Below, one piece after another: positions 1,039 through 24,476 of a stretch of DNA of 64,000 nucleotides. A program made the position numbers and the translations under genes. Location of the stretch: contig NC_043017.1 in NCBI RefSeq assembly GCF_006345805.1, positions 18,228,001 through 18,292,000 of the forward strand. Direction: 5' to 3'. How positions within the stretch are numbered: the first letter of the stretch is position 1; every line of letters starts with the position of its first letter. Under the pieces are notes generated by a model, which worked only from the letters and a program-made list of their open reading frames with translations, was not told the DNA's origin and searched no databases. Source of the stretch: Octopus sinensis (lineage: Eukaryota).

Positions 1039-1121
1039 AACTTTCAAAAAGCAGTGACCAAGGATACACATTTTGTTGCAGCCTATGTGCAGATGGCTGC
1101 AATTTACTTGGAATATAACAT
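1039..1121 (+). CDS. NCF2: NCF2-like exon, TPR (83 nt)
   Basis: ctttgcag|AAC...AT|gtaagt; [27 protein letters not shown]. Confidence 0.85.
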
Positions 1122-4100
1122 GTAAGTGCATGGTTTCTAGAATTTTAAAAACATTTTTGACTCCCTCAGATATTCCCACATAAGGGTAGGTGTATCAGAT
1201 ATTCCCACATAAGGGTGGGTGTATCTGAGGCAGCTATGTATCTTCTCTATACCAAGACACCTCTGCTTATCCCTGGCATAAAACAACCTCTTCACCCTCT
1301 CAAATACTCGTCTGGCTTAAAAGGGATTTTTTCCCGTTGTTGATGATAAGCATGGCTGTGGGGCTAAACAGTGAAGTTTGTTTTTCAGTTATGTGGATTT
1401 GGGTTCAATCCTATTGCATGCCACTTTGAGCCGGAGTTTCTCACTATAACTTCAAGCTGACTAAAGTCTTGTGAGTAGAATTTATATAGAAGAAACTGGA
1501 AATCTGGGAGATTTTGTCATCTACACACCCCCACTACCACCACCACCACCACCTGGCCTTCCAAGTATTTAACAGGGTGTTCTATATATCAATATAAATG
1601 TTACATTGATGCAACAATAATAATGAGTCTTAGAAGACTTGTCATCATTTAACATCTGTTTTCCATGCTGGCTTGGATTGGATGGTTTGACTGGAGCTGG
1701 TGAAGCTATATCAAGTTCCATTGTCTGTTGTGGCATGGTTTCTACAACTGGATGCCTTTCCTAATGACAACCACTCCATAGAGTGTACTGAGTGCTTTTT
1801 ATGTCGTACCATCACTGGTATCAATTCTGTTGTGGTGGACAGTTCTGGAGTACAGCAGTGCACCAGATATTTTGTTCCTTAGTCATCTTCATAAGGCTCA
1901 GAGTCTTGAGATTGGCCTTGTTATATATATATATTGTACAAAATGACAGAAAATGAAAAATATATTCTGGTGTATGTACTCTTTTGCTCTTTTACTTGTT
2001 TCAGTCATTTGACTGCGGCCATGCTGGAGCACTGCCTTTAGTCGAGCAAATTGACCCCGGGACTTATTCTTTGTAAGCCCATCGGTCTCTTTTGCCGAAC
2101 CGCTAAGTGACGGGGATGTAAGCACACCAGCATCGGTTGTCAAGCAATGCTAGGGGGACAAACACAGACACACAAACACACACACACATACATATATATA
2201 TACATATATACAACAGGCTTCTTTCAGTTTCCGTCTACCAAATCCACTCACAAGGCATTGGTCGGCCCGGGGCTATAGCAGAAGACACTTGCCCAAGATG
2301 CCACACAGTGGGACTGAACCTGGAACCATGTGGTTGGTAAACAAGCTACTTACCACACAGCCACTCCTGCGCCTATATATATATATCTTTATAATCATTT
2401 TGTCTTTTCAGTTGTGATGCTGCAATCAAGTGTTACCAAGTAGCTATACATTTGATGGGTAACAAGAAATATATCAACTACCGACCTCTGGGATTGAACC
2501 TAATTTTATATTTGACAGAGGTAAATATATGTAATTCCTATTGATACCACTTGCTTCTCTCTGCTTTCAATCCTACCCACTAGTGTAGCGGGGAGGGGGG
2601 GCAGTCTGCCCCAGGTGGCACTTTTGGGTCTGCTGTGTTTTTTGTGGGGTCCAAGGGTGGCAAAAGGAAGGGCTGCCCCAAGCGGCACACATTCTAGCTA
2701 TGCTAGTGACCCTTACCCCACCTATTTTTACACCATTTGTAATTTTTCTCTTTTATTAATTCCTACCTGAGTATTTATACCTGAAAATGTTTTGTGTGTT
2801 GCTACTTTGCTCTAAATGAAACCCGATCAAACAAACATACAATTTATGTATGATCTAAGACTTTCCATTTGTGACCATCAAACAGACTTTACCGAGGCAG
2901 TTTTTCGACATCTTGCTGAACACAAGATAAATGGATGATACTTCATGCTGGCCTGGGTTGAACACTTTGGCAGGATCTCAATGGTCCAAGGACTGTATCC
3001 TGCTCCAGTGTCTGCTTTATCATGGTTGCTATGGCTGGATGCCCTTCCTAATTCTATCCACTTTACAGAGAGAACTGGGTACTTCTTTTCAAGACACCAG
3101 CACTTATGAGGTTATCATGAAGCTCATGAAATTAAGGAATTCCTTAAGCTAAGTGAAGCCACAATCGAAAGGAAGGTGGCTTTATGTTCAGAGATGAGAT
3201 TAAAATACGAGAGAAGGGTCCAGAACAGCATATGTGGGTGTTTGTGTGTGACCTTTGCACATCACATGATGTTTGTAAATGAGCATCATCCCCGTACAAG
3301 CGAGGTTATTTGCTGCTAGTCTTCTATGGAAAATGTGTCTTAGCTAAGGGAAAATATTACCTTGCCAGGAAACAAGTAAGGGTCGGTGACAGGAAGGGCA
3401 TCCAACCTCGACAGATTCTGTCTGACTTGTGCAAGTATAGAAAAGTGAACGTAAAAGAGATGATTGGGCTGATATTTCTTTACATTTATTTTGTCATATA
3501 GAACATTTTTTTGCTTCGTTCTAAAATGTTTAGAATTTTCGAGTATATGCGTTTTCTTTCAAATCTTAATCCTTTTACGCAGTTCCTTTTAAGTTCATTG
3601 TCATGAGAAAAAATAATATTTTACATACATCCTAGTTGTATTTTATGCCTTGCCAGGTGTGAAAATTTTAGAAAATTTGAGATTAATGACTTTTTTTTCT
3701 ATTTAAAATTGCTGTATTCACAATGTTTTATATTTCTTGTGTAAAACAATGAAATAAAAGAGTATAAAAAGATCTTACATTTAGTATTATTCTTCTCTCT
3801 CTTTCTTCATAAACCCACAAATACCTCTCTATATGTATTGGTGCTGATCTGAAGCTGAACCAAAAGGCAGGATTTATTAGTTATTGTAGTCCTAGTTACT
3901 CTGTCATCATCATGATCATCATTTAACATCTGCTTTCCATGCTGGCATAGGTTGGATGGTTTGACAGGAGCTGGCTTGGCAGAAGACTGCACTAGGCTTC
4001 AGTGTCTGTTTTGGCATGGTTTTTACGACTGGATGCCCTTCCTAAAACTAACCACCCCAAAGAATGGACTGAGTGGTTTTTAACCGGCACTAGCACAGGC

Positions 4101-7100
4101 GAGGTCAGTTTTGGTATGCCCTTCCAAATGCCAGTGTGGACTGAATGTTTTTTTACGTGACACCAGCACTGGCAGGGTCACCAAGTAACCTGCAAAACAA
4201 AGATTTTTTCAGAGGAAGGAGGTGACCTTGTGCCAGGTGATGAAAGATTAGAGTGTGACAGAGAAACAGAAACAAGTATCTTGCTGCAGAGGAGATACAT
4301 GGTTACCCAGTCAGAGAGAGAGAGCAAGAGGGAGATAGTGGCAAAGTGCTAGGGCATACTCACAAGGAACGGGGATCAGAATATGTGTGAATGAAATTTG
4401 GAATGATCATAACTTGAACACCTTTCACTATAGGCTTGCTGGATCAGGGTTAATCAGGGGCTAATCCAGTCTTTTGAATAAACTCACTTAAAAATTTCTT
4501 TGTGCATTGTTTTGCACTTGCCTTATTTTCTCTCTCCCCGCTCCATCCATGGGGTATTTTTTTCATGCTGTGTTCACTTCCTGCTGCTCTTTCTCAATCT
4601 TCCTACTCCCTTAGGGGTATTATTTCCATGTCACACTCTCTTTGTCTCTTCCCATTCAGGCTCTCCACAACCAAGCTGTTGCTGAATCAAAAGTTGACAA
4701 TTGGAAACAAGTAGAGATCTTAATAAACATGGCTATCAGTGCTCAACAGGAGGACAAATTTAACAACAAACTTAAAATATCTTTACAGGCCATCCAGGTA
4801 AGTCAAAAAAACAACTTTCTGTGTCAATTCTAACAATCTTTTTGATGCCAAATTACTAGAGTTAGCCTCTGGTTACTTTATACAAAGCATTTTATTTTAA
4901 AGCATTTATATTTAACCCTTTAGTGTTCAGATTACTCTGTTAAATGTAATATTTTTTTACTCAAATTGTTTTTAATTAATCATGCATTATCTTATAGCTT
5001 TTGAGGTTTTAATGACGTGATTGTTCATTTTTAGAATGTCAATGTAGGTTAGGTGTGAGAGCCTTGATCTGGTCAGTTTAAACATAAAATAGGTAGAAAA
5101 CTTCGGCTGGATATGGCCAGTTTAAACACTAAAGGGTTAAATGAAAACCTTCCACTGTTATTTTCTGTAAAAAGCCCATACTATCACATTGTTATATCTT
5201 GCATACTGTGTTTGATTCCTCTTCTATCCAGCTTTCCTGTCTCTCCATTTCTACTCTGTTGTTCATGCACACTCACACTGTGTGTATAAACAATGCTCTC
5301 TTTATAGCTTTTGTTAAACCTCTACATTCAGGGTACCTGTTTCACCACTTTGTCGCACTGAATTTTGCATATGAGCAACATACAACCTGCCCTTCACTCA
5401 GAAGGATAGACGCTTTATTGATGATAGAAGTAGTAGCTCCCTGGTCACAATTTACAAGGTATCCACTTCAACTGCTAATTTAGTCAGTTAATGGAAACTA
5501 TTGACTGCTTCTTGGAAACCATCCTGGCAGTTCAGAAAATCTATTTCCTGGGTGCATTTTTATGCTTAATGCTGTGTGTGGTGTGAAACAACACCTATTA
5601 AAGGACCAATGAACTGAGGAAAGCCAACGATCATACAATATTGTGTATGTTTGTATATATTTAAGACTGGACTATTGGTAGATAGTACAAAGCTGACCCA
5701 ACCTTCAGTGTCCAGTTTCAATGAGCAGTGATGTAGCCAGCAATATCTCTGTGGGCCACATAACTCAGGACTGCTACATTTTACAGGTTAAATTTTTCAA
5801 CCAAAAATGTACAGTAAGTCCCGACCATGATGATAAATGGGGGAGAAAAAAAATATAAAACATTCTCTACATAAAGACAACATTACCACTTGCCTAGCTT
5901 CCCTAGCACCACATCAATGGCCATATAAAACATGGGAAGGTTTTCTGCCATACCCTGTGTACTCCAGGACCAGTATAAATCAAAACCTGGACAGACCTTT
6001 TTACCCCTTGTTTCAGTCATCAAACTGTAGCCATGCTGAAACACCACCTTGAAGAATTTTTTTAGTTGAACAAATCGATCCCAATACTTACATTTTAAAA
6101 CCTTTTAGTTATTCTATTGGTCCCTTTTGCCAAACTGCTAAGTTACAGGGATGTAAACACACCAACACTGGTTGTCACGTGGTGTTTGGGGGACAAACAC
6201 ACACACATGAGCAGCTTCTTTCAGTTTCCGCCCACCAAGTCCAATCACAAAGCTTTGGTCAACCTGAGGCTATAACAGAAGATACTTGCCCAAGGTGACA
6301 TGCAGTGGGACTGAACTCAGAACCATGTGGTTGGGAAGCAAGCTCCTTACCACACAGCCATGCCTGCACCTCCTGGCCCTTTCATTGAATTGGTTAAGGT
6401 ATTGTGTACATGTGTGACAATGACATAACCATCACTTTTATAGCTGCCTTACTTCTGAGGGCACACAGACAAAGTAGTGTATAGGTGGTAGTAGTCATGA
6501 CATTTCAGTCAGTAACACAACTGTAGTCTTCATTAATACTCTTTTACAAAAAAGGTTTAGTGATAGTATGGCCATGTGGATATATTCTTTGATGCCTGTC
6601 ACTAGATTGGTCCACTTTTGTCTGTAGGAATTTTTACCCACCCCTACCCCCATATTATCAATTATTATTTATAGTTATATGGGTTGGGGAATGGGCAAAC
6701 TTGTTGGAGTGTTGGCAAAAATGCTGCATGGTATTAATTTTGACTGTTTACATTCAGAGTTCAAATCCCTCTGAAGTCAACTTTGCCTTCTATCCTTTTG
6801 GAGTTGATAAAATAAAATCCCAGTGAAGGACAGAGATTGATATAATCAACTAGCCCTCTGCTCTCAGAAATTAAGTGTTGTGTTTAAATTATGGGGGTTG
6901 ATAAAATGAAATACCAGTCAAGTACTGAGCAATGTAATTAACTAGGCCCCTCCCCTCAAAAATTGCTGGTTTTGTGCCTAAATTAGAAACAATTATAATA
7001 AAGGTACTTTTAATGAGCTTCATTAAAAGATGTCTTTTTAGCTTTTCCAAAGGCTCTGACTACAGTTTAAACTACACACACATACACACGTACAAAAGTT

Positions 7101-8371
7101 GGTGGTCCCTCAGTCAGTTTGGAGGGACATATACAAGTGAAATGATTTGTTAATGAAATCCACTCCAAAATTTGTACAAGCACACACACATACCTATACA
7201 TCCAATTTATATATACACATATCTTTATATATAAAAGAGAGGTTGTGTGCTGTCTGTCTCCTACGATTTAGATTCCTAACTACTCCCACATTTTGCGGTG
7301 CAGTATCTTATAGTCGTGATTCATATCGAGCCCTTCTGGGTATTAGCGCGCGTCTACGATGAGTCTACGATTTAAAAAAAAAATTACCATCAATTTTTCC
7401 CATTTTTGGCATATATAAGGGAAGTAACTCTCTAAAAATGTATTATTAAATCTCAGAACGTAAAAAGCTACAGTAACACCCCCCCCCTTTGTGGTTAGCC
7501 ATATTTACATCTCTAAAAATGCTTATATAGTTATTTCCCTTACAAACCTGAGCAACGCCGGGCGATACTGCTAGTATGTATATATGTAAAGGTGTGTGTG
7601 TGTGTATATATATATACATATATAAAATCTACTGAAAAACAGGTACATAATTGCTGTCAAAGGTAAGTGATACAGCAATGAAAGTAGGAGCATTAGGATA
7701 TTCAAGGTAGAAGAGTAAAATTGTCTGCATATACACACATGCACAAACATGTGCATGTACACACACACACATATGCAAGCACATTAATATACATCCATGT
7801 GCACATAGATGTATATACATGTGCACACACGCACACATACACACTCACACTTAATGTGTCTTTTTGTTCTGTTTTCAGCAAAAACAACAGCCCCAACAGT
7901 TTCCCATTGGAACTGGAATCTTCCATCCACCCAAATGGATGATAGAAAGTACGAAGAATGTCAACTACCTGGGAGATTCCAAGGTGAGTGAAGGTGGTTA
8001 GTTCATGGTCAGTGGTGAGCATGTGGTGGTGGGGGGGGACTGATCATGTAGGTGTGAGATTTATTTTGGTGGTGGCAGGGAAGTTGTCTGTATGTGGTGT
8101 TTTGTGGTTGAGCATTGATACTCAAATATTTAGCAGACAGAAATGCCTCTTCAGTGATGGTCATGGAGGTGGAGATGAACCAATTATAAGTACAAGTATT
8201 TTAGTAAACCAATACGAGACAAACTGGAAGAAACTTGTATTAGATACATCAGCAAAAACAACTGAGATTTGGAACAAAAATCTTTGGGTTCTGTGTTCAA
8301 ACACTTCCGAGTATATCTGTACAATACAATGTATATATTTAATGTACATATATTTATAGTGTACAATATAT

Positions 8372-8412
<41 letters not shown>

Positions 8413-8518
8413 CCTGCTCGCTTAGCCAGCGAGGTGGCGTCATTTGAAGGCTAAAAACAATGCGAAGCGCATTGTGACCAGCGATGTGTAGCAACATCTG
8501 ATAACCTGGTCAGTCTCG

Positions 8519-8575: not shown

Positions 8576-11500
8576 TGTGGTTAGTACAGTCATCTCCTCC
8601 ATACTTGCCAAAATAATTTAAATCTGGAATCATTTTCTTTTCCAGGTATATCTACCTATTGATCTGTCATCTACTTATCTCTCTCTCCACATATTTGTAT
8701 CTAGTTAATGCTCTTTGCCTTAAATAAGTGCACACTAAATAGAAACTTCTGATCCAGTATCAATATGAGAAACCACTGAAGTGTCTTCCTCACTTCTGTT
8801 TTCAGTTATTTATTCAGCTAAATCCCTTCTTTGTGGAAGTGTCCCACCCCCATCTACATACATCCCTTTCTTTTTTGTCGTTCAACTTCAGCAATTAGAA
8901 TTAACAACCCTTTTTCCATGCTTTTCCCAAGTTGAGTAGTTTGAAGGGATCTGATCAGCCACAGGGCTGCATAAACTTCCAGCTGGACGCCCTTCCTAAC
9001 ACTGACCACTCTGTGGTGTGTAAACACTTATATTTTATATTTTAGGGTGACGAGCTGGCAGAAACGTTAGCAAAATGCTCAGCGGTATTTCGTCTGTCGC
9101 TACATTCTGAGTTCAAATTCCGCTGAAGTCGACTTTGCCTTTCATCCTTCCGGGGTCGATAAAGAAAGTACCAGTTACGCACTGGGGCCGATATAATCGA
9201 CTCAATCCCTTTGTCTGTCCTTGTTTGTCCCCTCTATGTTTAGCCCCTTGTGGGCAATAAAGAAATATATATTTTATGTTTTCCAGGTTATTTCGACCAA
9301 CAACAATCCCTTCTCCATGAATGAATCCAATTCAAGAAGCAAGTCATCAAATGACGAGTTATGGCCCAATCTCAAGGAACGAGAAACAGGGCAAAAGAAA
9401 GAAATGAAAACTGTGATTGAACTGCTAACGACAATAACGTTAGATACAGCAATAAAAACTGTTAATTCGAAACAGAAAGAGAGCAATCTTGGCACAGATG
9501 GTAAACCGCAACGACCACCAAGACCACAATCCAAATCACCACCACTTCGACCTCCACTTCCACCAAGAATTTCCGAGATCCGTAAACTTCCTAAACTATG
9601 TAAAGAATCACTTTATTATTATTCACCATCATCAACATTATCATCATCATAGCCCCCTCCCCTAAACTTACTGGCCTTGTGCCAAAATTTGAAACCATTA
9701 TTATTAGTGTCCTCATCATCACAACAGTGGTTTGGTAGAATTGTTAGCATTGCATAAAATTCTTTGTGGTATTTCATCCAGCCTCTTATGCTCCGAGATC
9801 AAATCCCACAGTAATTAACTTTACCTTACTTTCCTCCAGGGTTGAAATAAAATAAAATGGGCGATGGTCCAGTCCCAAGTTTGATGGTTTTTAACTTTCC
9901 TTCATCCCCCAAAATTGTTGACCTTGTGACAACAATTCTGATGACAATCTTCAATGAATAATTCAGGTTTTATCTTGCATTAAATTTAAGTCTTTCCTGA
10001 GAAATTTGTTTTATAGTTTAAAAATTTATATTCCAAGGAATGAAATATGATGTTGACTTAATATAAATTGTCTTGTATTTAGCCCCTTGTTAAGAGATCG
10101 TGGGGAGATCTATAACCCCTGGCCCTCTCCATCTACCAGCATCATTTTCATGTTTAAAAGAAAAAAACGACAAGATTGATATTTTCAAGGATGGGTTAAT
10201 ATGTGTTTGTATGCTGCACACATGTATCTATGGTATGTGTGTGTGTAGATGTGTGCATGCATATATGTGTGAGTCTTTCTTAGTGTATCTGTACATATGT
10301 ATGTGTGTATAGATATACACACACAATATTAATAATGGCAGGATAAACATTTTACCAACCTATATGAAGTTAATGAACTTTTAGCCACATTACTGCTGTG
10401 ATTTTAATTACAAAATGTTTTCTACTCATTCTTTAAGTTAGCACCACTTAACTGTTTGTTTTCTCTGCAGAATACATCCCTAAATAATTCCCTGCCCACC
10501 ATTTATTCTTACTGTTTCTGTTTTTACAGCAACTAACAATGACCTGAAATCTCAAGACAATACAAAAGTGAGTATATACATTTATATATATGTATGTATG
10601 TATTAAGACATCTTTTCTGTGTCTGTATGTCTATTTGTGTTTAAGTATGCTTTTCTGTGTCTATATGTATATGTTTGTTGGTATATAATATATATATAGT
10701 TTAAAGATCCAACAGAGGTAGAATCAACAAAAAAAAACCACTCCATCCAGTGAGAGATAATATCAATTTGAATACACAACTGAAAGGGCTACCAATAATT
10801 TCATGCTATTATGACGCTTGAACATGCACAATTATAAAGGATGCCTTGTATCTTAAAAAGAGCCTGAAAGTCTCGTGCATCATAATAGCACGAAACTCCC
10901 GGGAACAGGAGGGGATGCATTGATGGAAGAGTCACTAAAGCAGCCAAAGATGCGTGATGAAAGATTCTGTCGGATTCCCAGCTCTTTAGCCTTCTTTACC
11001 AGTGGGATATTTCCCATTGATAATGGCTAAAGAGCTAGAAATGCATTTGGGAATCTAATTGGATGGAACACTGGACAGATATAGTGTTTTTTTTTACACT
11101 CTTTTTACCATAAGAGAGAATTTTTGTTCTCCATGGTAACTGCAGTAAATGTCTTTAGAAGTTGAAATATTTCACAGACACGTTTTAACTAACCTAAAGT
11201 TCGTTTTTATATCTATATATATGTGTTCACCTGTTTGTATATATTTGTAATTTTGTAAATGTAAATGCTTATAACTTCATACATGTCCATGTGTGCACAT
11301 TTATGTATATGTATTCTTGTTTTTGTCTGTTAGTAGATCTGTATTTGTCAGTACTTCTATGTTTTCTACTTTTTATTTTACAAGCCAAAATTTATTCTCT
11401 GCACACTCACACACATATATAATACAGATACATGTATATATGTTTATTTATGTATTAAACTTATATTATGCTAGAATGTCATCTCCACTGAGGAAAACAC

Positions 11501-14500
11501 TGCTTAATTTTGTCTGTAAGCACCATTTTCATTGATCTGCTTATGTTATACTCATATTTTCTTAAACCATTTTATGTTCTTGCTCCCAGTCTCCTGTATG
11601 TGCTTTGCCTTCTATCACTAAACTCTTTGACAATCATTGATATTCCTGTAACATTTTCTCCAGTCAACTCTTTTTGTTCATATTCTCTGGCCTCCCATAA
11701 TTCCTCTTAATCCTCTTTGTACATTAATCTGTTGTCTTTTAAACCAGGTCTTGTAATCTACCTGCCCAGTTACTATGGCTGCATGATCTACAAACCTCTG
11801 CGATAATTAACTTCAAAAATTAATTTTTATTATAATTCCTCTGGGTATTTTAATTAATCATTTCATTTTTAATTCATGTGAATGCTGGTCTTATAATCTC
11901 ATCCAGTTTCTTGTGTTAGTCAACAATTATTTTTACCACTTCATTAATCAACCCCCTTACTCCATAAATCAGATACATCCATTTAAAATTTTATTACCTG
12001 TAACTGCAGAAAGCAGTTTTATATACCAATCTATCTTTTGTTTTGGAATGTCATATTTGAAACATTTTTTTTTTTTGAGATATGTTAAGTTTTAATCAAA
12101 GCAAAATGACTAGCAGAAGAAACTAATTTTATTTTTTGGTAGATATTTAACAAAACTTCTGGAATAACTCAGAAATTTAATCTTCCAGTTAACATACTTT
12201 TAAACAGTTAAAATATAATTTCATGTTCAGAACGTTTAAATTGAACTTAATTAATCAAGACTTCATCTGCTTGAGACATGGCTCTTCATCAGGTGGACCA
12301 AACTACTAAAACAAAAAAGTATTTTTCATTAGGTGTGCCATTCAGAAAGTCCCATGGCCCCAGTTGGTCCATGACTGGTTTATTCAAATCGACTCCAGCA
12401 CTTTTTCTATGAAATCTGGTACTTATGTTCTAGTGGTCTCTTATACCAAACTAAGATGCAGGGACATAAACAAGTTTCAATCTTGTGTTGAGTCCCATCT
12501 GAGACATCAACAACCATCACCACTACATTCCACAGTTAAGAACAGGGAGGCCAAAAGGTGCACAACAATTTAACATATATATATATATTTATTTATATAT
12601 ACAGGCACGGGCATGGCTGTGTGGTTAGGGAGCTTGCTTCCTAGCTATATGGTTTCGGGTTCAGTCCCACTGCGTGGCACTATGGGTAGGTGTCTTTCAC
12701 TATAGTCCCGAGCTGACCGGAGCGTTGTGATTGAATTCGGTAGGTGGAAGTTACTGCCGTGTGTGTATATGTGCGTGTAGGTGCTTGTGCCTCTCCGAAA
12801 GAGAGAGAGATATATAGTCATAAGAAGCTACCTTTCAGTTGAAGAGACCCCACTTCCTTGTTGCCAGCAGAGATAATTAACTCCTTAAACTTTCCCCACT
12901 ATTTTTTTTTTTTACTTTGGTTATTATACTTTTAGGGCACCCACCTTCACATCAAATTAGGTCATCAAAGTGAGAGAATCTACTGACTATTTCTATGCAT
13001 GTTTTTGAGTACGGAAAAGAATTTCCTGGGTGTTTTTACAGCATACTCCTGTTCATATAAACCCTGCACCACCTTCCTGTATGCTCATAATTTACATCAT
13101 TGGCCATACCATAAGAGAATGGCTATCTACTCTTTGCATACTGTGCAAAGAGTAGATATCTTCTTTCTTGCTTCTGTATAATTTCAAAGTTTGTATAATT
13201 TTGCACAGATAAATATATTAATCAATCAAATTCCAACATGGTCTGATTTTTCAGAGTCTTTTGTTTTGTAGTTTTCACAATTTTATATTAAATATCATTT
13301 TGAGTGAGTTATTTAAAGAACAAATTTTGGCATTTTTCACCAGCTGTCAACTGTGAAGCACAACTGTCTGCTAATGTGGCTGCTGCATAAACTGAAGATT
13401 GACAAAAGAGGAAAAGTACTTGTGCTATTGTCATATGTCATCTGTTACTTGTTTCAGTCATTAGATTGCAGCCATGCTGGGGCACCACCTTGAAGAATGA
13501 ATTGACCCTAGCACTTATTTTTTTGAAAGCCTGGTACTTATTCTGTCGGCTTCTTTTGCTGAACTGCCAAGTAAAGACACCAACACTGGTGGTCAAGCAG
13601 AGCTGGGACACACGGACAAGGCTTCTCGCAGTTTCTGTCTACTAACAAATCCATTAATAAGGCTTTGGTTAGCCTGAGGCTATAGTAGAAGACACTTGCC
13701 CAAGGTGGTACAAAGTGGGACTGAACCAGGAATCGTGGTTGAGAAGCAAGCTTTTCAAAATAAATAGAACATGAAAAACCAGACTGTTGGAATTTGACTT
13801 AATATGAATATATGTGCACCAGTTTGTCAGTATAAATAACAGCAGTATGTTACTTCCTCATTTCGCAGGCGCCCCGAGCTGAATACAAGGAAGTTGGTCG
13901 AACTGTGTTTGTGAAATACAGCCTCCTAAGCAGCAACCCTAATATATTGACGGTCAGACAAGGCGATAAAATTGTAGTAAAAGCATTAGGTTGGTGTGAC
14001 CATCTTTCTTTTTTTGTTCTACATTATTTACAGCTGAGGATTAGGAATTCGAACCTTGCTAAAGCTTTTAAATTGAAATACTTTGACTCTTCTCTAGATA
14101 CCATGCCTTATTTAGTTCTTCTAATAACTGAGAATAGGGAATCTGCAGGTTCATGTGTAACCTTAGCAACCATTCACCATGCAGATTACTTCTAAAATGT
14201 GATGCTTATTTATTTACATTCTTGCATATTTCGATGATGTGGTTGAGCTGACAATGCCATATCTCAGGCAGATGCGAACTAAGTTATACTGGCCAGTGTG
14301 AACTTAGAAGAAGTAGAACAATGGGACCAGACATGGCTGGATTAAATGCATAGAAGGTTAAGTACAACCTCTGCAAGAAGTCTGATGTCCATAACAGATT
14401 TATAATTGACTACGTTATTCTATTGCGGTGGCCATGGTGGAGTATCACCTGGTATTAAACCCAGAAATTTTCTCTCTCTTTAGTAATATATATGTATGTA

Positions 14501-14652
14501 TGTATCTATATGTATGTATGTATCTATATGTATATATGTATCTATATATATGTATGTATCTGTATGTATGTATGTATCTATATATATATGTATGTATGTA
14601 TCTATATGTATGTATCTATCTATCTATATATATATGTATGTATATATGTGCA

Positions 14653-14685
<33 letters not shown>

Positions 14686-16244
14686 ATGCATGCATGCATG
14701 TATGCATGTATGTATGCATGCATCTATATGTATGTATGTATGTATGTATGTGTATGTATGTATGTATGTGTATGTATGTATGTATGTGTATGTATGTATC
14801 TGTATGTATGTATGTATCTATGTATGTATGTATGTATGTATCTGTATGTGTATGTATGTATGTATGTGTATGTATGTATGTATGTGTATGTATGTGTGTG
14901 TGTGTATGTATGTGTATGTATGTGTGTGTGTGTATGTATGTATATGTATGTATATGTATGTATGTATGTGTGTATGTGTGTGTGTGTGTGTATGTATATG
15001 TATGTATATGTGTATATATATGTATGTATGTGTATGTATGTATCTATATATGGATCTATGTATATGTATGTATCTATGTATATGTATGTATGTATCTATC
15101 TATATATGTATGTATCTATATGTATGTGTGTGTATGTATATGTATGTATGTGTCTGTATGTATGTGTCTATGTATGTATGTATGTATGTGTCTATGTATG
15201 TATGTATGTATGTATGTGTCTATGTATGTATGTGTCTATGTATATGTATGTATCTATATATATGTATGTATCTATATATATGTATGTATCTATCTATATA
15301 TATGTATGTGTATATGTATCTATATATATGTATCTATATATATGTATCTATATATATGTATCTATATATATGTATCTATATATATGTATCTATATATATG
15401 TATCTATGTATATGTATCTATGTATATGTATCTATATGTATCTATATATGTATATGTATCTATATATGTATATGTATCTATATATGTATATGTATCTATA
15501 TATATGTATATGTATCTATATATATGTATATGTATGAATCTATCTATATATGTATGTATCTATATGTATGTATGTATCTATGTATGTGTATGTATGTATG
15601 TGTATGTATCTATATGTGTGTATGTATATGTATCTATATGTATCTATATGTGTGTATGTATATGTATCTATATGTATCTATGTATGTATCTATGTACGTA
15701 CGTACGTACGTACGTACGTACGTACGTACGTATGTACGTATGTATCTATATATATGTATGTATCTATATATGCATGTATATGTATGTATGCATGTATATG
15801 TATGTATGCATGTATATTTATGCATGTATGTGTATATGTATGCATCTATGCATGCATGTATCTATGTGTGTATGTATATGTATGTATCTATATATATACA
15901 TGTATGTATGTATCTATATGTATGTATCTATATATATATATATACATGTATGTATGTATGTATCTGTATGTATGTATGTATGTATCTATATATATATACA
16001 TGTATGTATGTATGTATCTGTATGTATGTATGTATGTATGTATGTATGTGTATGTATATGTTTGTATATGTATGTATATGTGTGTATATGTATGTATGTA
16101 TGTGTCTATATATGTATGTATATATCTATGTATGTGTATGTATCTATGTATGAATATGTATATTTATGTATGTATATATATATATATATGTATGTATATA
16201 TGTATCTATATATATGTATATGTATCTATATATATGTATATGTA

Positions 16245-16283
<39 letters not shown>

Positions 16284-18051
16284 CTATATATGTATGCATC
16301 TATGTATATGTATGCATCTATATATATACATGTATGTATGTATCTATCTATATATGTATGTATGTATCTATCTATATATACATGTATGTATCTATGTATG
16401 TATCTATGTATGTATGTATGTATCTATATATATATATGTATGTATTTATGTATGTATCTATATATATATATATATATGTATGTATCTATACTATGTATGT
16501 ATGTATCTATCTATCTATCTATATATGTATGTGTATGTATCTATATGTATGCATATGTATGTGTATGTATCTATATGTATGCATATGTATGTGTATGTAT
16601 GTATGTATGTATGTAAGTATGTATGTATATATCTATATATGTATGTATATATCTATGTATGTATGTATATATATATATGTATGTATGTATATATCTATGT
16701 ATGTATGTATATATATATATGTATGTATGTATATATCTATGTATGTATGTATATATCTATGTATGTATGTATATATCTATGTATGTATGTATATATCTAT
16801 GTATGTATGTATATATATGTATGTATGTATCTATATATATGTATGTATGTATGCGTATGTATGTATGTATGTATCTATATATATATATGTATGTATGTAT
16901 ACGTATGTATCTATCTATATATGTGTATGTATGTATATGTATGTACGTATCTATATATGTATGTATATATGTATGTATGTATCTATATGTATGTATGTAT
17001 CTATATGTATGTATGTATCTATATGTATGTATGTATCTATATGTATGTATGTATGTATCTATATATATGTATGTATGTATCTATATGTATGTATGTATGT
17101 ATACATCTATGTATGTATATATATCTATGTATGTATATGTATGTATGTATGTATGTATGTATCTATATATGTATGTATATATATTTATGTATCTATATTT
17201 ACGTATCTATATGTATGTGTATGTATCTATATATATATATATATATATATGTATATGTATGTATCTATATGTATGTATGTATTAATATGTATCTATATGT
17301 ATGTATCTATCTATATGGATGTATCTATCTATATGTATGTATATGCATTTAGGTATGTATGTATGTATATGTATGTATATATGTATGTATATATGCATGT
17401 ATATATGTATATATGTATGTGTATATATGTATGTATCTATATATGTATCTATGTATATGTATGTATGTATCTATATGTATATATACATGCATGTAAGTAT
17501 CAATATATATATATGTATGTATCTATATATAAATGTATGTATGTATACGTATGTATTTATATATGTATGTATATATGTATATCTATGTATGTATATATGT
17601 ATATATATATGTATGTATACATCTATGTATGTATATGTATCTATCTATATATATGTATGTATGTATCTATATGTATATATGTATCTATATATGTATCTAT
17701 ATATGTATGTATGTATGTATGTATGTCTGTGTGTGTGTGTGTGTGAATATGTATGTATATATATGTATGTGTATGTATGTATGTATGTATGTATGTATAT
17801 GTATGTATGTATGTATCTATATATATGTATGTATGTATGTATCCATATACATGTATGTATGTATGTATCCATATACATGTATGTATGTATGTATCCATAT
17901 ACATGTATGTATGAATCTATCTATATATGTATGTGTCTATATGTATGTGTGTATGTGTATGTATCTATATATATATACATGTATGTATGTATGTATCTAC
18001 ATGTATGTATGTATGTATCTACATGTATGTATGTATGTATGTATGTATGTA

Positions 18052-18086
<35 letters not shown>

Positions 18087-18429
18087 ATGTATGTATATAT
18101 ATGTATATGTATGTATGTATGTATGTATGTATATGTATGTATGTATGTATGTATCTATATATATGTATGTATGTATCTATATATATGTATGTATGTATGT
18201 ATCTATATACATGTATGTATGTATGTATCCATATACATGTATGTATGAATCTATCTATATATGTATGTGTCTATATGTATGTGTGTATGTGTATGTATCT
18301 ATATATGTATGTGTCTATATGTATGTGTGTATGTATCTATATATATATACATGTATGTATGTATGTATCTACATGTATGTATGTATGTATGTATGTATGT
18401 ATGTGTGTGAATATGTATGTATATATATG

Positions 18430-18461
<32 letters not shown>

Positions 18462-18975
18462 TCTATATATATGTATGTATGTATGTATCTATATATATGT
18501 ATGTATGTATGTATCTATATACATGTATGTATGTATGTATCTACATGTATGTATGTATGCATGTATCTACATGTATGTATGTATGCATGCATGTATGTAT
18601 GTATGTATGCATGTATGTATCTATGTATGTATGTATCTATGTATGTATCTATGTATGTATGTATCTATCTATGTATGTATGTATCTATGTATGTATGTAT
18701 GTATGTATCTATGTATGTATGTATCTATGTATGTATGTATGTATCTATGTATGTATGTATCTATGTATGTATGTATCTATGTATGTATGTATCTATGTAT
18801 GTATCTATGTATGTATGTATCTATGTATGTATGTATCTATGCATGTATGTATGTATGTATGTATGCATGTATATTTATGCATGTATCTATATATGTATGT
18901 GTGTATGTATATGTATCTATATGTATGTATCTATTTGTATGTATGTATGTATGTATTTGTATGTATGTATGTATC

Positions 18976-19007
<32 letters not shown>

Positions 19008-21437
19008 TGTATGTGTATGTATATGTTTGTATATGTGTGTATATGTATGTATGTATGTGTCTATATATGTATGTATATATCTATGTATGTGTATGTATAT
19101 GTATCTATATATATGTATATATATGTATGTATATATATATATGTATCTATATATGTATGTATATATATATGTATATATATATGTATGTATCTATATATGT
19201 ATGTATCTATATATGTATGTATCTATATATGTATGTATCTATATATGTATGTATCTATGTATATGTATGTATGCATCTATATATATACATGTATGTATGC
19301 ATCTATATATATACATGTATGTATGTATCTATCTATATATGTATGTATGTATGTATCTATATATATATGTATGTATCTATACTATATATGTATCTATATA
19401 TATATATGTATCTATACTATGTATGTGTATGTATCTATATGTATGTATATGTATATATGTATGTATATATGTATGCATATGTATGTGTATGTATGTATGT
19501 ATATGTATGTATGCATGTATGTATGTATCTATGTATATATCTATGTATATATCTATGTATGTATGTATATATCTATGTATGTATGTATATATCTATGTAT
19601 GTATGTATCTATATATATCTATGTATGTATGTATCTATATATATATATATGTATCTATATATATATATGTATCTATATATATATGTATGTATCTATATAT
19701 ATATGTATGTATCTATATTATATATGTATCTATATATATGTATGTATCTATATGTATGTATGTATCTATATATATGTATGTATCTATATATATATGTATG
19801 TATCTATATGTATGTATCTATATGTATGTATGTATGTATGTATCTATATATGTATGTATATTATCTATATATGTATGTATATTATCTATATGTATGTATG
19901 TATGTATGTATGTATCTATCTATATGTATGTATGTATATATATTTATGTATCTATATGTATGTGTATGTATCTATATATATATATATATATGTATGTATC
20001 TATATGTATGTATGTGTACGTATGTATCTATATGTATGTATGTGTACGTATGTATCTATATGTATGTATCTATATATATATATATATGTATCTATGTATG
20101 TATGTATCTATGTATCTATCTATATGTATGTATGTATCTATGTATCTATTTATATGTATGTATGTATGTATCTATCTATCTATCTATCTATCTATGTATG
20201 CATATGTATGTATGTATATGTATCTATATATATATGTATGTATGTATATATATATATGTATGTATGTATCTATATATATGTATGTATGTATCTATATATA
20301 TGTATGTATGTATGTATCTATATATATGTATGTATGTATGTATCTATATGTATGTATGTATCTATATGTATGTATGTATCTATATATATGTATGTATCTA
20401 TATATATGTATGTATCTATATATATATATGTATGTATCTATATATATGTATGTATGTATCTATATATATATGTATGTATGTATCTATATATATATGTATG
20501 TATGTATCTATATATATATGTATGTATGTATCTATATATATATGTATGTATGTATCTATATATATATGTATGTATGTATCTATATATGTATGTATCTATC
20601 TATCTATATATGTATGTATCTATCTATATATATATATGTATGTATCTATCTATATATATATATGTATGTATCTATATATATATATATATGTATGTATCTA
20701 TATATATATATGTATGTATCTATATATATATATATGTATGTATCTATCTATATGTATGTATGTATCTATATATATGTATGTATGTATCTATATATATGTA
20801 TGTATGTATGTATCTATATGTATGTTATGTATCTATATATATGTATGTATGTATCTATATATGTATGTATGTATCTATATATATGTATGTATGTATCTAT
20901 ATATATGTATGTATGTATCTATATATATGTATGTATCTATATATATATATATGTATGTATCTATATATATATATATGTATGTATCTATATATATATATAT
21001 ATGTATGTATCTATCTATATATATATGTATGTATCTATATGTATGTATGTATCTATATATATGTATGTATGTATCTATATATATGTATGTATGTATCTAT
21101 ATACACGTATGTATGTATCTATATATATACATGTATGTATGTATCTATATATATACATGTATGTATGTATCTATATATATACATGTATGTATGTATCTAT
21201 ATATATACATGTATGTATGTATCTATATATATGCATGTATGTATGTATCTATATATATACACGTATGTATGTATCTATATATATACATGTATGTATGTAT
21301 CTATATATATACACGTATGTATGTATGTATATGTATGTATGTATCTCTATATGTATGTATGTATCTATATGTATGTATGTATGTATCTATATATATATGT
21401 ATGTATGTATCTATATATATGTATGTATGTATGTATC

Positions 21438-21468
<31 letters not shown>

Positions 21469-22404
21469 ATCTATCTATCTATATATATATATATGTATGT
21501 ATCTATCTATATATATATATATGTATGTATCTATCTATATATATATATATGTATGTATGTATCTCTATATATATATATGTATGTATCTATCTATATATAT
21601 ATGTATGTATGTATCTATCTATCTATATGTATGTATGTATCTATCTATCTATATGTATGTATGTATCTATCTATATGTATGTATGTATCTATATGTATGT
21701 ATCTATCTGTATGTATGTATGTATGTATATGTATGTATCTATATATATATGTATGTATGTATATGTATGTATCTATATATATATGTATGTATGTATATGT
21801 ATGTATCTATATATATATGTATGTATGTATATGTATGTATCTATATATATATGTATGTATGTATATATATGTATCTATATATATATGTATGTATGTATAT
21901 GTATGTATCTATATATATATGTATGTATGTATATGTATGTATCTATATATATATGTATGTATGTATATGTATGTATCTATATATATATGTATGTATGTAT
22001 ATATATGTATCTATATATATATCTATATCTATATATATGTATCTATATATATGTATCTATATAAATATATATGTATCTATATAAATATATATGTATCTAT
22101 ATATATATATATATGTATCTATATATATATATATGTATCTATATATATATATATGTATCTATATATGTATGTATCTATATATATATGTATGTATCTATAT
22201 ATATATGTATGTATCTCTATATATATATGTATGTATCTATATATATATGTATGTATCTATATATATATGTATGTATCTATATATATATATATGTATCTAT
22301 ATATATATCTATATCTAATATATATATATTATATGTATCTATATAATATATATGTATCTATATATATATATATGTATCTATATATAATATATATTATATG
22401 TATC

Positions 22405-22435
<31 letters not shown>

Positions 22436-23443
22436 ATCTATATGTATGTATGTATCTATCTATATGTATGTATGTATATGTATGTATGTATCTATATGTA
22501 TGTATATGCATTTAGGTATGTATGTATGTGTATGTATGTATGTGTATGTATATGTATATATCTATCTATATATGTATATGCATGCACATACATATATATA
22601 CATACATACATGCATATACATACATATAGATACATACATACATACACACACACATATATATACATACATACGTATACAAAAGCACCATCCGTTCGTGGCC
22701 GTTTGCCAGCTCTGTCTGGCACCTGTGCAGGTGGCACGTTAAAAGCACCCACTACACTCACGGAGTGGTTGCCGTTAGGAAGGGCATCCAGCCGTAGAAA
22801 CACTGCCAGATCTGACTGGGCCTGATGAAGCCTTCCAGCTTCACAGACCCCAGTTGAACCGTCCAACCCATGCTAGCATGGAGAACGGACGCTAAATGAT
22901 GATGTATCTATCTATATATGTATATGTATGTATATGTATGTATGTATATGTATGTATGTATATATATGTATGTATATATGTATATATGTATATGTATGTA
23001 TATATGTATGTATCTATCTATATGTATGTATCTATCTATATGTATGTATATATGTGTATGTATGTATATATGTGTATGTATGTATCTATATGTATGTATC
23101 TATCTATATGTATGTACGTATCTATATGTATGTATCTATCTATATGTATGTACGTATCTATATGTATGTATATGTATGTGTGTATGTATGTATGTATGTA
23201 TGTGTGTGTGTGTGTGTGTGTGTGTGGTGTGTATGTATGTATGTATGTATGTATGTATCTATCTATGTATCTATCTATCTATGCATGCATGCATGTATGT
23301 ATGCATGTATCTATCTGTATGTATCTATGTGTGTATGTATGTATATGTATGTATGTATGTACGTATGTGTATGTATGTATGTATGTATGTATGTATGTAT
23401 GTGTGTGTGTGTATGTATGTGTGTATACGTATGTATGTATATA

Positions 23444-23474
<31 letters not shown>

Positions 23475-24476
23475 ATGTATATGTATGTATGTGTATTTGT
23501 GTATATGTATGTGTGTGTATGTATGTGTGTGTATGTATATATGTGTGTGTATGCATATATGTGTGTATGCATATATGTGTGTGTATGTATATATATATGT
23601 GTGTGTATGTATGTATATATATATGTGTGTGTGTATGTATATGTGTGTGTGTATGTATATGTGTGTGTGTATGTATGTGTGTGTGTATGTATGTATATGT
23701 GTGTATGTATATATATGTGTGTATGTACGTACGTATCTATGTGTGTATGTATGTACGTATCTATATATATGTATCTATACATGTGTATGTATGTATCTAT
23801 ATATGCATCTATATATATATATATGTACGTATGTGTATGTATGTATGTGTGTATCTCTATATGTATATGTATGTGTGTATGTATATGTATCTATTTGTAC
23901 GTATGTGTAAGTATGTATGTATCTCTATATGTGTGAGCCTGTGGGTTAGAGATGCTCAGCTGTGAAGAGTTGTAGGCAGTGAGCCTGTATGCAATGACAA
24001 CCACACTTTTACTTACCTTGAGTTGTCTTTTCAAACTGCCATCCTATGTGCGAGGCCCAATGTTTGTAGATCCTTTCTCATCACATTATCTCAAATACAA
24101 ACACTAACAGTAATATCAAACTAAAACCTGTGTCAATTTTTTTAATTTTTTGTCACCAATGAAAGCACTACAAGTTGTGTCCCTAGCTAACCTCCCTGCT
24201 CACCATGACCCCACTTAGTCCTTTCTCTCTAACTGACTGATTGTGATAAATAGGACACTGTGAAATAGTCAAACCGCAACTTGCAGGCTTTGAACTGGTG
24301 GTCAAAATGTTGCTATTTTGATAAAAATCTTGACCCCCACCCCGCCCTCTTCAACAGGCGAACCCACTTAAAATCTTAAATGTTTTCTGTTTCTTCCAAT
24401 AGGGGCTGACTGGTTTCAGGGCTGTTTGAAGAATAAAATTGGTCTGGTGCCTTGGAACTGTATTCACCAACGTTGA
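1039..24476 (+). CDS. NCF2: p67phox (NCF2)/NOXA1-like NADPH oxidase activator, multi-exon: join(1039..1121,2412..2520,4660..4797,7879..7983,9287..9599,10530..10567,13869..13989,24403..24476); 5' end incomplete; 326 aa visible
   Basis: All junctions are GT-AG with consistent phases (2,0,0,0,1,0,1). The translation [71 protein letters not shown]...[25 protein letters not shown] is colinear with recalled human p67phox (AFTRSINRDKHLAVAY...RGNQLIDYKILGL...VLYNIA...FRPNERQV...DYLGKATVVAS). It ends in an SH3 ([10 protein letters not shown]...DWFQG...GLVPWN). Orthology to NCF2 versus NOXA1 is not resolvable by eye. Confidence 0.85.
2412..2520 (+). CDS. NCF2: NCF2-like exon, TPR and beta-hairpin insertion (109 nt)
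   Basis: tcttttcag|T...GAG|gtaaat; [36 protein letters not shown]. Confidence 0.9.
4660..4797 (+). CDS. NCF2: NCF2-like exon, TPR (138 nt)
   Basis: cccattcag|GCT...CAG|gtaagt; [46 protein letters not shown]. Confidence 0.9.
4916..5136. mobile_element. piggyBac-like MITE, second family
   Basis: TTAA flanks; TIR ccctttagtgtt. Confidence 0.8.
7222..7574 (+). mobile_element. non-autonomous Helitron
   Basis: Inserted at A|T with no TSD; 5' TCTTTATATATAAAA; 3' GC-rich subterminal segment (cctgagcaacgccgggcg) then CTAG. Confidence 0.75.
7879..7983 (+). CDS. NCF2: NCF2-like exon leading into the activation domain (105 nt)
   Basis: gttttcag|CAA...AAG|gtgagt; [35 protein letters not shown]. Confidence 0.9.
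9287..9599 (+). CDS. NCF2: NCF2-like exon: end of activation domain, low-complexity linker, Pro-rich region (313 nt; alternative donor at 9581)
   Basis: ttttccag|GTT; open frame [10 protein letters not shown]...[32 protein letters not shown]; two phase-1 donors (9581 gtaaac, 9599 gtaaag). Confidence 0.75.
10530..10567 (+). CDS. NCF2: NCF2-like micro-exon (38 nt)
   Basis: tttttacag|CA...AAA|gtgagt; converts phase 1 to phase 0 as required to join 9599 and 13869; [12 protein letters not shown]. Confidence 0.6.
13869..13989 (+). CDS. NCF2: NCF2-like exon, N-terminal half of SH3 (121 nt)
   Basis: tttcgcag|GCG...G|gttggt; [40 protein letters not shown]. Confidence 0.75.
14486..22677. repeat. giant compound microsatellite (TATG/TATA/TCTA/TGTG)n, about 8.2 kb
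   Basis: Directly visible; built almost only from TA, TG and TC dinucleotides. Confidence 0.98.
22678..22904 (+). mobile_element. RTE-tailed short element (truncated LINE or RTE-mobilised SINE); related copies at 40646-40897(-), 41828-42267(-), 59168-59403(-)
   Basis: The 3' 170 nt match the 3' end of the RTE at 50470-50654, including the (GAT)n tail. Confidence 0.8.
22905..23935. repeat. second compound (TATG/TGTG)n block, about 1 kb
   Basis: Directly visible, separated from the first block by an RTE-tail element. Confidence 0.97.
24403..24476 (+). CDS. NCF2: NCF2-like terminal exon, C-terminal half of SH3, TGA stop
   Basis: ttcttccaatag|GG; phase 1 matches exon 13869; [23 protein letters not shown] carries the SH3 W..G and GLVP.N motifs. 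Confidence 0.8.

What the first reader, a model, noticed from the sequence alone, without database searches (positions are those of the whole stretch)
1039..24476. NOX activator with an atypical TPR-AD-PRR-SH3 architecture and no detectable PB1 domain
Seen: a phase-consistent 8-exon model encoding TPRs, an activation domain (YLGDSKVIS, keeping the Y, L and V aligned to p67phox Y198/L199/V204), a long linker, a Pro-rich block and one terminal SH3. Established: p67phox is TPR-AD-SH3-PB1-SH3, NOXA1 is TPR-AD-PB1-SH3 and fungal NoxR is TPR-AD-PB1. Inference: a PB1-less activator could not bind a p40phox/Bem1-type partner, which points to a differently wired NOX activation complex in this lineage.
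Basis: partly seen in the sequence, partly recalled or inferred. Interest (0 to 1): 0.7.

Follow-up and report, generated by a model that had tools for sequence, protein, structure and literature searches.

The report
Octopus NOX activator lacking PB1
This is the already annotated octopus version of the p67phox/NOXA1 protein that switches on a superoxide-making enzyme; it does lack the PB1 domain, but so do the same proteins of all snails and mussels sampled, sea urchins and sea squirts, as first reported in 2007, so it is largely ordinary.

Summary
The eight exons at 1039-24476 (+ strand) all have AG/GT borders. They translate exactly to residues 64-389 of the RefSeq protein 'neutrophil cytosol factor 2 [Octopus sinensis]' (389 aa). 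Exon 1 lies 22.3 kb upstream of the window. The architecture is TPR, activation domain, linker, Pro-rich block, one C-terminal SH3. No PB1 was found by Pfam, by a family-specific PB1 profile run on the protein and on six-frame translations of the whole Octopus and Argonauta genes, or by profile-profile comparison of the linker.

The architecture is atypical only against vertebrates and fungi. Kawahara and Lambeth (2007) already reported PB1-less p67phox-like proteins in Ciona and sea urchin and tied this to the absence of p40phox there. In my census, all sampled gastropods, bivalves and cephalopods, an annelid, a nemertean and echinoderms lack PB1. A sponge, Hydra, Lingula, Priapulus, hemichordates and amphioxus keep it.

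Two points are specific to cephalopods. They keep the SH3-B-type domain that other sampled molluscs lack. They have also replaced the near-universal Rac-contact arginine (human R102). TPR-AD and SH3 are under purifying selection (dN/dS about 0.15).

Verdict: a new member of a known kind, of low interest.

The parts
1039..1121 (+). Coding exon 2 of 9 (aa 64-91; TPR2 helix B, contains the conserved Asp equivalent to human D67). This is the first exon inside the window.
   Evidence: AG/GT borders and exact translation match to P0001; tblastn; family N-terminal HMM E=1.5e-15.
2412..2520 (+). Coding exon 3 (aa 91-127; TPR3 and the hairpin '[16 protein letters not shown]', where the Rac-contact Arg of other species is Met/Gly).
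   Evidence: E=5e-22; column analysis.
4660..4797 (+). Coding exon 4 (aa 128-173; TPR4 and capping helix).
   Evidence: E=1e-26.
7879..7983 (+). Coding exon 5 (aa 174-208; the segment leading into the activation domain, ending ...NVNYLGDSK).
   Evidence: E=1.3e-21; aligned to human p67phox residues up to 214 in PDB 8WEJ_D and 1HH8.
9287..9599 (+). Coding exon 6 (aa 209-312; end of the activation domain 'VIS', a fast-evolving linker with one predicted helix, and the Pro-rich block [22 protein letters not shown]).
   Evidence: The SK[ST]PP.RPP.P core is conserved in Argonauta and partly in O. bimaculoides. Region predicted disordered or helical at low confidence. Linker dN=0.70 against Argonauta.
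10530..10567 (+). Coding exon 7, a 38-nt micro-exon ([13 protein letters not shown]).
   Evidence: Present in the RefSeq model P0001; borders and phase; tblastn.
13869..13989 (+). Coding exon 8 (aa 326-366; N-terminal half of the SH3 domain).
   Evidence: family SH3 HMM hit on the six-frame ORF, E=1.3e-3; hhalign 97 %.
13990..24402 (+). Last intron (10.4 kb). It splits the SH3 domain and holds a 9.4-kb degenerate (TATG)n array at 14486-23928.
   Evidence: Tandem Repeats Finder; composition; the orthologous intron in Argonauta is about 2.2 kb.
24403..24476 (+). Coding exon 9 (aa 366-389; C-terminal half of the SH3, ...[23 protein letters not shown], plus the TGA stop).
   Evidence: SH3 HMM E=7e-6. 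The best non-cephalopod matches are all SH3-B domains of p67phox/NOXA1 relatives.

Best explanation
The locus is the Octopus sinensis orthologue of the p67phox/NOXA1-type NADPH-oxidase activator, already annotated in RefSeq as NCF2. It has the PB1-less form that is usual in molluscs and several other invertebrate groups.

Shown here: a p67phox-type four-TPR domain; an activation-domain motif that keeps the Tyr, Leu, Gly and Val aligned with human Y198, L199, G200 and V204; a fast-evolving linker; a conserved Pro-rich block; and a C-terminal SH3 most similar to SH3-B. TPR-AD and SH3 are under purifying selection.

Inferred mechanism: the TPR-AD module docks on and activates a NOX2-like oxidase. 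The tail (the SH3-B-type domain plus its own PxxP block) makes the tail-to-tail contact with a p47phox/Tks-like organiser, as Kawahara and Lambeth proposed for sea urchin. No PB1 partner of the p40phox type takes part.

Evolution, inferred from the census: TPR-AD-PB1-SH3 is probably the ancestral animal arrangement, because a sponge and hemichordates have it. PB1 was lost in the mollusc lineage and independently in others. Cephalopods kept the SH3, which the sampled gastropods and bivalves lack.
For: Identity: 100 % match to P0001 and the same locus in GCA_006345805.1. A profile of the octopod proteins hits human p67phox structures 8WEJ_D, 1HH8, 1WM5 and 1E96 at E=5e-25 to 1e-23 over TPR plus AD. 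An exhaustive HMMER search recovers the p67phox/NOXA1/NoxR family.

No PB1: Pfam finds nothing even at E<=10. A family PB1 HMM finds 47 PB1 domains among the 78 family representatives but none in the cephalopods. Six-frame scans of the window, the whole Octopus gene and the whole Argonauta gene give best E=0.75-3.2, and no hit up to E=50 on the + strand between the AD exon and the last exon of the window. In the same kind of scan the split SH3 halves are found at E=7e-6 and 1e-3, and 21 of 30 spiked held-out PB1 fragments outrank every window ORF. hhalign of the linker against PB1 gives 0.1 % probability.

Conservation of the architecture: Argonauta P0003 and the intronless 1,536-nt transcript contig encoding P0004 have the same domain order.

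SH3-B type. Selection: dN/dS 0.15 for TPR-AD and 0.15 for SH3.

Prior description: PMC2121648. Census.
Against: No functional data exist for any cephalopod phox component.

The Rac-contact Arg (human R102) is Arg in 72 of 76 non-cephalopod representatives. It is replaced in all three cephalopod proteins, and D108 becomes N. Canonical Rac-dependent activation therefore cannot be assumed.

I could not search the octopus genome for NOX2, p22phox, an organiser, or a PB1-bearing paralogue.

The O. sinensis protein is a computational RefSeq model. Direct transcript evidence was seen only for the relative P0004.

The structure model is of low confidence (mean pLDDT 48).

The PB1 scan is not fully sensitive: fragments of the Lingula PB1 fell into the noise.
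Confidence: 0.8

Rival explanations
1. A PB1 domain exists but was missed. It would lie in unannotated or alternative exons, or be too divergent to detect, so that the true protein is NOXA1-like (TPR-AD-PB1-SH3).
For: Pfam's PB1 model is insensitive in this family: it misses the PB1 of Lingula, Saccoglossus and P0058. Held-out Lingula PB1 fragments were not recovered by my own scan. The O. sinensis protein is a prediction.
Against: Only about 125 residues separate the AD from the SH3. They are predicted disordered or one long helix, and hhalign gives 0.1 % against PB1. There is no PB1 signal in any frame of 64 kb of window, of the full 46-kb Octopus gene or of the 50-kb Argonauta gene. An intronless transcript contig from a relative encodes the same PB1-less chain. 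A convergent ODF2-like gene starts 790 nt after the stop, leaving no room downstream.
Confidence: 0.03
2. The protein is no longer a NOX activator. It would be a fast-evolving TPR-SH3 adaptor that has been neofunctionalised, or is drifting, after losing both the PB1 and the Rac-contact arginine.
For: The cephalopod clade sits on a long branch. R102 and D108 equivalents are replaced. The two Octopus species share only about 86 % identity and Octopus-Argonauta 50 %. The linker has dN=0.70.
Against: dN/dS is about 0.15 in both TPR-AD and SH3. The AD positions aligned with human Y198, L199, G200 and V204, and the invariant D67, are kept. The PRR core is conserved. The architecture has been stable since the octopod-P0004 split.
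Confidence: 0.12
3. One reading: a lineage-specific rewiring of the NOX complex, marked by loss of PB1 in this (cephalopod) lineage.
For: PB1 is absent. Other protostomes, Lingula and Priapulus, keep a PB1.
Against: PB1 absence is shared by all sampled gastropods and bivalves, by Owenia, Lineus and echinoderms and by Ciona. It was published in 2007, and p40phox orthologues were not found in the invertebrates examined there. The loss therefore predates cephalopods and is not a special feature of them.
Confidence: 0.05

Closest known systems
Strongylocentrotus purpuratus p67phox-like protein (Kawahara and Lambeth 2007; P0007 here) and other echinoderm homologues
   Same: No PB1. Long Pro-rich tail followed by a C-terminal SH3-B-type domain. 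AD valine or isoleucine kept. A tail-to-tail contact with a p47phox-like organiser was proposed.
   Different: Echinoderms carry two tandem TPR-AD modules and are 550-1,185 aa long, whereas the octopus protein has one module and 389 aa. Echinoderms keep the Rac-contact Arg; cephalopods do not.
Gastropod and bivalve 'neutrophil cytosol factor 2-like' proteins (Lottia Lg-p67phox, Haliotis rubra, Gigantopelta aegis, Mytilus trossulus, Potamilus streckersoni)
   Same: TPR-AD followed by Pro-rich repeats, with no PB1.
   Different: They have no detectable SH3; the cephalopod proteins end in an SH3-B-type domain. Most keep the R102-equivalent Arg; Potamilus has His.
Vertebrate NOXA1 (TPR-AD-PB1-SH3)
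   Same: Single TPR-AD module and a single C-terminal SH3-B. No SH3-A. The octopus protein is NOXA1-like minus the PB1.
   Different: NOXA1 keeps a PB1 fold. According to PMC2121648, its p40phox-binding lysines are kept in fish and chicken but lost in mammals. The octopus protein has an internal PRR in its place.
Human p67phox / NCF2 (TPR-AD-SH3A-PB1-SH3B; PDB 1HH8, 1E96, 8WEJ)
   Same: Homologous TPR-AD at E about 5e-25. D67 and the AD residues aligned with Y198, L199, G200 and V204 are conserved. SH3-B is homologous.
   Different: The octopus protein has no SH3-A and no PB1. R102 is replaced by Met/Gly and D108 by Asn. K196 is not basic.
Fungal NoxR, and Hydra, Lingula and Priapulus homologues (TPR-AD-...-PB1)
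   Same: Homologous TPR-AD module.
   Different: Their tails are the opposite: PB1 present and SH3 absent.

Membership tests
p67phox/NOXA1/NoxR NOX-activator family (homology) | N-terminal four-TPR domain homologous to p67phox residues 1-~190 | tested here: met
   The profile hits 8WEJ_D, 1HH8, 1WM5 and 1E96 at E=4.6e-25 to 1.3e-23 over positions 3-214. Pfam TPR_1 and TPR_2 score above their cut-offs. The N-terminal HMM recovers 78 family representatives.
p67phox/NOXA1/NoxR NOX-activator family (homology) | Activation-domain motif after the TPRs with the Val204-equivalent hydrophobic residue | tested here: met
   [12 protein letters not shown] aligns with human KKDYLGKATVVAS. Y, L, G and V are kept in the octopods; P0004 has Ile at V204.
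Rac-GTP-dependent activator (functional class of p67phox/NOXA1) | Rac-contact residues equivalent to human D67 and R102 | tested here: not met
   The D67 equivalent is kept (76/76 others plus cephalopods). The R102 equivalent is Met or Gly in the octopods and Tyr (or Ile) in P0004, depending on where the one-residue gap is placed, against Arg in 72 of 76 others. D108 becomes N. I therefore do not claim canonical Rac dependence. Binding itself is not testable with these tools.
Vertebrate-type p67phox or NOXA1 architecture | PB1 domain between the AD and the C-terminal SH3 | tested here: not met
   (see best explanation).
Vertebrate-type p67phox or NOXA1 architecture | C-terminal SH3-B domain | tested here: met
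   hhalign gives 97 % probability, E=8e-11, against an SH3 profile built without the cephalopods. The nearest non-cephalopod SH3s are all SH3-B. Pfam SH3_9, SH3_2 and SH3_1 pass their cut-offs in P0004; they are sub-threshold in Octopus and Argonauta.
Vertebrate p67phox specifically | Internal SH3-A domain | tested here: not met
   Only one SH3 is found, at the C-terminus.
Invertebrate PB1-less 'p67phox-like' proteins (Kawahara and Lambeth 2007) | TPR plus AD, no PB1, Pro-rich tail with or without SH3-B | tested here: met
   definition taken from PMC2121648.
Functional NOX2-type complex in the same organism | Presence of NOX2-like, p22phox-like and p47phox/Tks-like partners in the octopus genome | not testable with these tools
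   No octopus proteome or genome could be searched. The Lottia p47phox-like query returned mollusc SH3PXD2-like proteins, but no octopus entry appeared among the 120 listed.

The most novel reading that the evidence does not exclude
Cephalopods may run a NOX activator whose GTPase interface has changed. The Arg that contacts Rac is conserved from fungi to humans (72 of 76 other representatives), and PMC2121648 lists it among the critical Rac-binding residues. It is replaced in all three cephalopod proteins, together with D108N, while the TPR-AD module stays under purifying selection. The activator could therefore be Rac-independent, or could use another small GTPase or another contact. It would rely on its retained SH3-B and PRR tail for recruitment.
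Probability: 0.2. Interest if true: 0.5.

Novelty: new member of a known kind. Interest (0 to 1): 0.2.

Why it matters
It matters little as proposed. The lack of PB1 is the expected state for a mollusc NOX activator and follows from what has been known since 2007, and the gene is already annotated.

Two modest points remain. First, the census suggests that TPR-AD-PB1-SH3 was the ancestral animal arrangement, with repeated independent PB1 losses, and that cephalopods are the only sampled molluscs that keep the SH3-B. This is useful for anyone reconstructing the evolution of the phox complex. Second, replacement of the Rac-contact arginine in cephalopods gives a simple, testable question about whether Rac dependence of NOX activators is universal.

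Tried and rejected
It was superseded by the database hits.
- The third word-indexed search, with a lophotrochozoan N-terminal alignment (A2), returned only 22 mostly truncated vertebrate entries and not even P0001. It was useless for a mollusc census, so the census rests on the exhaustive representative search plus cluster look-ups.
- The Lottia p47phox-like query returned SH3PXD2/Tks-like proteins dominated by vertebrates. No octopus entry appeared in the 120 rows shown, so the presence of an organiser in octopus stays open.
- AlphaFold on the three-sequence alignment gave mean pLDDT 48. It was used only for coarse secondary structure. I did not run fold search, because a low-confidence model gives meaningless matches.
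- Pfam alone is not adequate evidence for PB1 absence, because it misses the PB1 of Lingula, Saccoglossus and P0058. That is why a family-specific HMM with spiked controls was built.
- The correlation between a basic residue at human K196 and PB1 presence, proposed in PMC2121648, is not significant in my census (Fisher p=0.43).
- Literature searches for octopus phox components and for the SRA run SRR6517992 found nothing relevant. The taxa of P0004 and P0058 could not be established.
- Rfam and tRNA scans of the window found nothing.
- The neighbour-joining tree is only a rough guide. No bootstrap or maximum-likelihood analysis was possible.
Full report
WHAT IS THERE

The window is AT-rich eukaryotic DNA. 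A striking TG/TA-rich block lies at 14.4-24 kb. I then checked it against the protein database.

The best hit, at 100 % coverage, is P0001, the NCBI protein 'neutrophil cytosol factor 2 [Octopus sinensis]' (389 aa). Further hits are a partial O. bimaculoides protein (P0002) and a 415-aa Argonauta hians orthologue (P0003).

The eight exons are 1039-1121, 2412-2520, 4660-4797, 7879-7983, 9287-9599, 10530-10567, 13869-13989 and 24403-24476. All have AG/GT borders. Joined, they translate exactly to residues 64-389 of P0001, ending in TGA at 24474-24476.

The window is identical to GCA_006345805.1 chromosome CM016879.1. There the gene spans 45.9 kb, and its first coding exon (aa 1-63) lies 22.3 kb upstream of the window.

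DOMAINS

A profile of the octopod proteins matches the solved human p67phox TPR-AD structures (8WEJ_D, 1HH8, 1WM5, 1E96) at E=5e-25 to 1e-23. The match runs through the activation domain. Octopus [12 protein letters not shown] aligns with human KKDYLGKATVVAS, so Y198, L199, G200 and V204 are kept.

The C-terminal 50 residues are an SH3 domain:
- It is sub-threshold in Pfam for Octopus and Argonauta.
- It is above the Pfam cut-offs in the next relative, P0004.
- It scores 97 % probability (E=8e-11) in hhalign against an SH3 profile built without the cephalopods.
- Its nearest non-cephalopod relatives are all SH3-B domains, meaning the C-terminal SH3 of p67phox/NOXA1-type proteins, and none are SH3-A.

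Between the AD and the SH3 lie about 125 residues. They comprise a fast-evolving stretch, one predicted long helix of low confidence, a conserved Pro-rich core (SK[ST]PP.RPP.P) and a 13-residue micro-exon.

IS PB1 REALLY ABSENT?

Pfam reports no PB1 even at E<=10. Pfam is weak evidence here, however, because it also misses the PB1 of the Lingula, Saccoglossus and P0058 homologues.

I therefore built a family-specific PB1 HMM. An exhaustive HMMER search of 1.84 billion representatives with the octopod profile gave 78 representatives that carry the full TPR-AD module. Iterating from one vertebrate PB1 found 47 PB1 domains among them and none in the three cephalopod proteins.

The same HMM was run with filters off on six-frame translations:
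- The best E-values were 2.9 for the window, 0.75 for the complete O. sinensis gene with flanks and 3.2 for the complete Argonauta gene.
- No window ORF on the + strand between the AD exon and the last exon scored up to E=50.
- In the same setting the two halves of the split SH3 are found at E=7e-6 and 1.3e-3.

As a power test I cut the PB1 domains of six held-out invertebrates into halves and thirds and spiked them into the window's ORF set. Of the 30 fragments, 21 outranked every window ORF. The Lingula fragments did not, so a very divergent split PB1 cannot be formally excluded.

Profile-profile comparison of the cephalopod linker with the PB1 alignment gives 0.1 % probability. The Lingula control gives 67 %.

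Two further points argue against a hidden PB1. P0004 is encoded by an uninterrupted ORF on a 1,536-nt contig assembled from SRR6517992, evidently a transcript, and it has the same TPR-AD-PRR-SH3 order. A convergent ODF2-like gene begins about 790 nt after the stop, which leaves no space for downstream exons.

I conclude that the absence of PB1 is real.

IS THE GENE FUNCTIONAL?

Between Octopus and Argonauta, dN/dS is 0.15 for TPR-AD and 0.15 for the SH3. The linker has dN=0.70. dS is 1.2-1.7, near saturation, so these ratios are approximate. Both structured modules are under purifying selection.

HOW UNUSUAL IS THE ARCHITECTURE?

Kawahara and Lambeth (BMC Evol Biol 2007, PMC2121648) reported several relevant points:
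- This fits the absence of p40phox orthologues in those species.
- The sea-urchin protein keeps SH3-B.
- They proposed tail-to-tail PRR-SH3 contacts with the p47phox-like organiser.

Their Lottia p67phox-like sequence is TPR-AD followed by Pro-rich repeats, with neither PB1 nor SH3.

My census, using cluster look-ups for names and my HMMs plus Pfam for domains, gives the following.

PB1-less:
- Gastropods: Lottia, Haliotis rubra, Gigantopelta aegis.
- Bivalves: Mytilus trossulus, Potamilus streckersoni.
- Octopods, and P0004.
- The annelid Owenia and the nemertean Lineus.
- Four echinoderms, which have duplicated TPR-AD modules; the starfish and the sea urchin also carry a C-terminal SH3, while the two crinoid sequences show none.

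PB1-bearing:
- The sponge Ephydatia (TPR-AD-PB1-SH3) and the hemichordates Saccoglossus and Ptychodera (PB1-SH3).
- Hydra, Lingula and Priapulus (PB1 without SH3).
- Amphioxus, vertebrates and fungi.

PB1 absence is thus the rule in sampled molluscs and is common elsewhere. The likely ancestral animal arrangement is NOXA1-like, with repeated PB1 losses. This last step is an inference from a rough neighbour-joining tree and from presence/absence only.

Only the retained SH3-B distinguishes cephalopods from other sampled molluscs.

A SIDE OBSERVATION WORTH RECORDING

In an alignment of the TPR-AD modules of the 78 representatives (with Lottia and human p67phox added), the Asp equivalent to human D67 is invariant. 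The Arg equivalent to R102 is Arg in 72 of 76 non-cephalopod sequences. In the octopods it is Met (HMMER alignment) or Gly (MAFFT), depending on where the one-residue gap is placed. In P0004 it is Tyr (or Ile). D108 is Asn in all three cephalopods.

[quoted passage not shown] The cephalopod proteins are an exception at the sequence level. Whether nearby lysines (K109/K110) compensate is unknown. I therefore do not claim canonical Rac dependence for this protein.

MECHANISM

Shown: homology of TPR-AD and SH3-B, a conserved PRR, no PB1, and purifying selection.

Inferred: TPR-AD activates a NOX2-like oxidase, and the SH3-B plus PRR tail binds a p47phox/Tks-like organiser. Mollusc organiser-like proteins exist, for example the Lottia p47phox-like protein, Biomphalaria 'infPhox' and SH3PXD2-like proteins. 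I could not verify one in octopus. No p40phox-type partner takes part.

VERDICT

This is a new member of a known kind (PB1-less invertebrate p67phox-like activators), already annotated in RefSeq, and of low interest. A modest lead on the changed Rac interface remains.

Noticed in passing
window 13990-24402 (array 14486-23928): The intron that splits the SH3 domain is 10.4 kb long. It is filled by a 9.4-kb degenerate (TATG)n / TATGTATG array (GC 19-28 %, strong positive GC skew). The orthologous intron in Argonauta hians is only about 2.2 kb, so the expansion is lineage-specific. A second TA/TG-rich array lies at about 25.6-26.3 kb.
   Followed up: partly
window 2412-2520 (codons for [11 protein letters not shown]): The Rac-contact arginine of p67phox (human R102) is Arg in 72 of 76 non-cephalopod family representatives from fungi to human. 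It is replaced in Octopus, Argonauta and P0004, and D108 becomes Asn, while D67 is kept. Among representatives of at least 340 aa, loss of this Arg occurs in 6 of 23 PB1-less proteins against 1 of 46 PB1-bearing ones.
   Followed up: partly
window 2070-2374, 6105-6371, 13624-13781, 12626-12749 (inverted); 2944-3087 and 3938-4081; 1-95 and 9178-9272: Several families of 100-300-nt interspersed repeats (60-89 % identity) lie in the introns. One copy ends 15 nt before the acceptor of the exon at 9287. They are probably SINE-like elements, but there is no Rfam or tRNA match.
   Followed up: partly
window ~25265 onward, minus strand: A convergent neighbour gene encodes an 889-aa ODF2-like protein (Pfam ODF2_N, ODF2_C). 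Its 3' end lies about 790 nt downstream of the NCF2 stop codon.
   Followed up: no
L004 (ENA ERZ25072999 contig, 2001-3437) and related representatives: An intronless gene on an 800-kb contig from an unidentified eukaryote encodes a TPR-AD-PRR-PB1 protein (P0058) that groups with the Lingula homologue. Its taxon could not be determined.
   Followed up: partly
family census (P0035 Ephydatia, P0025 and P0027 hemichordates, P0015 Lingula, P0012 Hydra, P0024 Priapulus): A sponge and hemichordates carry the NOXA1-like TPR-AD-PB1-SH3 arrangement, although p40phox has been reported only from vertebrates (PMC2121648). This implies an unidentified PB1 partner in these animals, and repeated independent losses of PB1 and/or SH3 across invertebrates.
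   Followed up: partly
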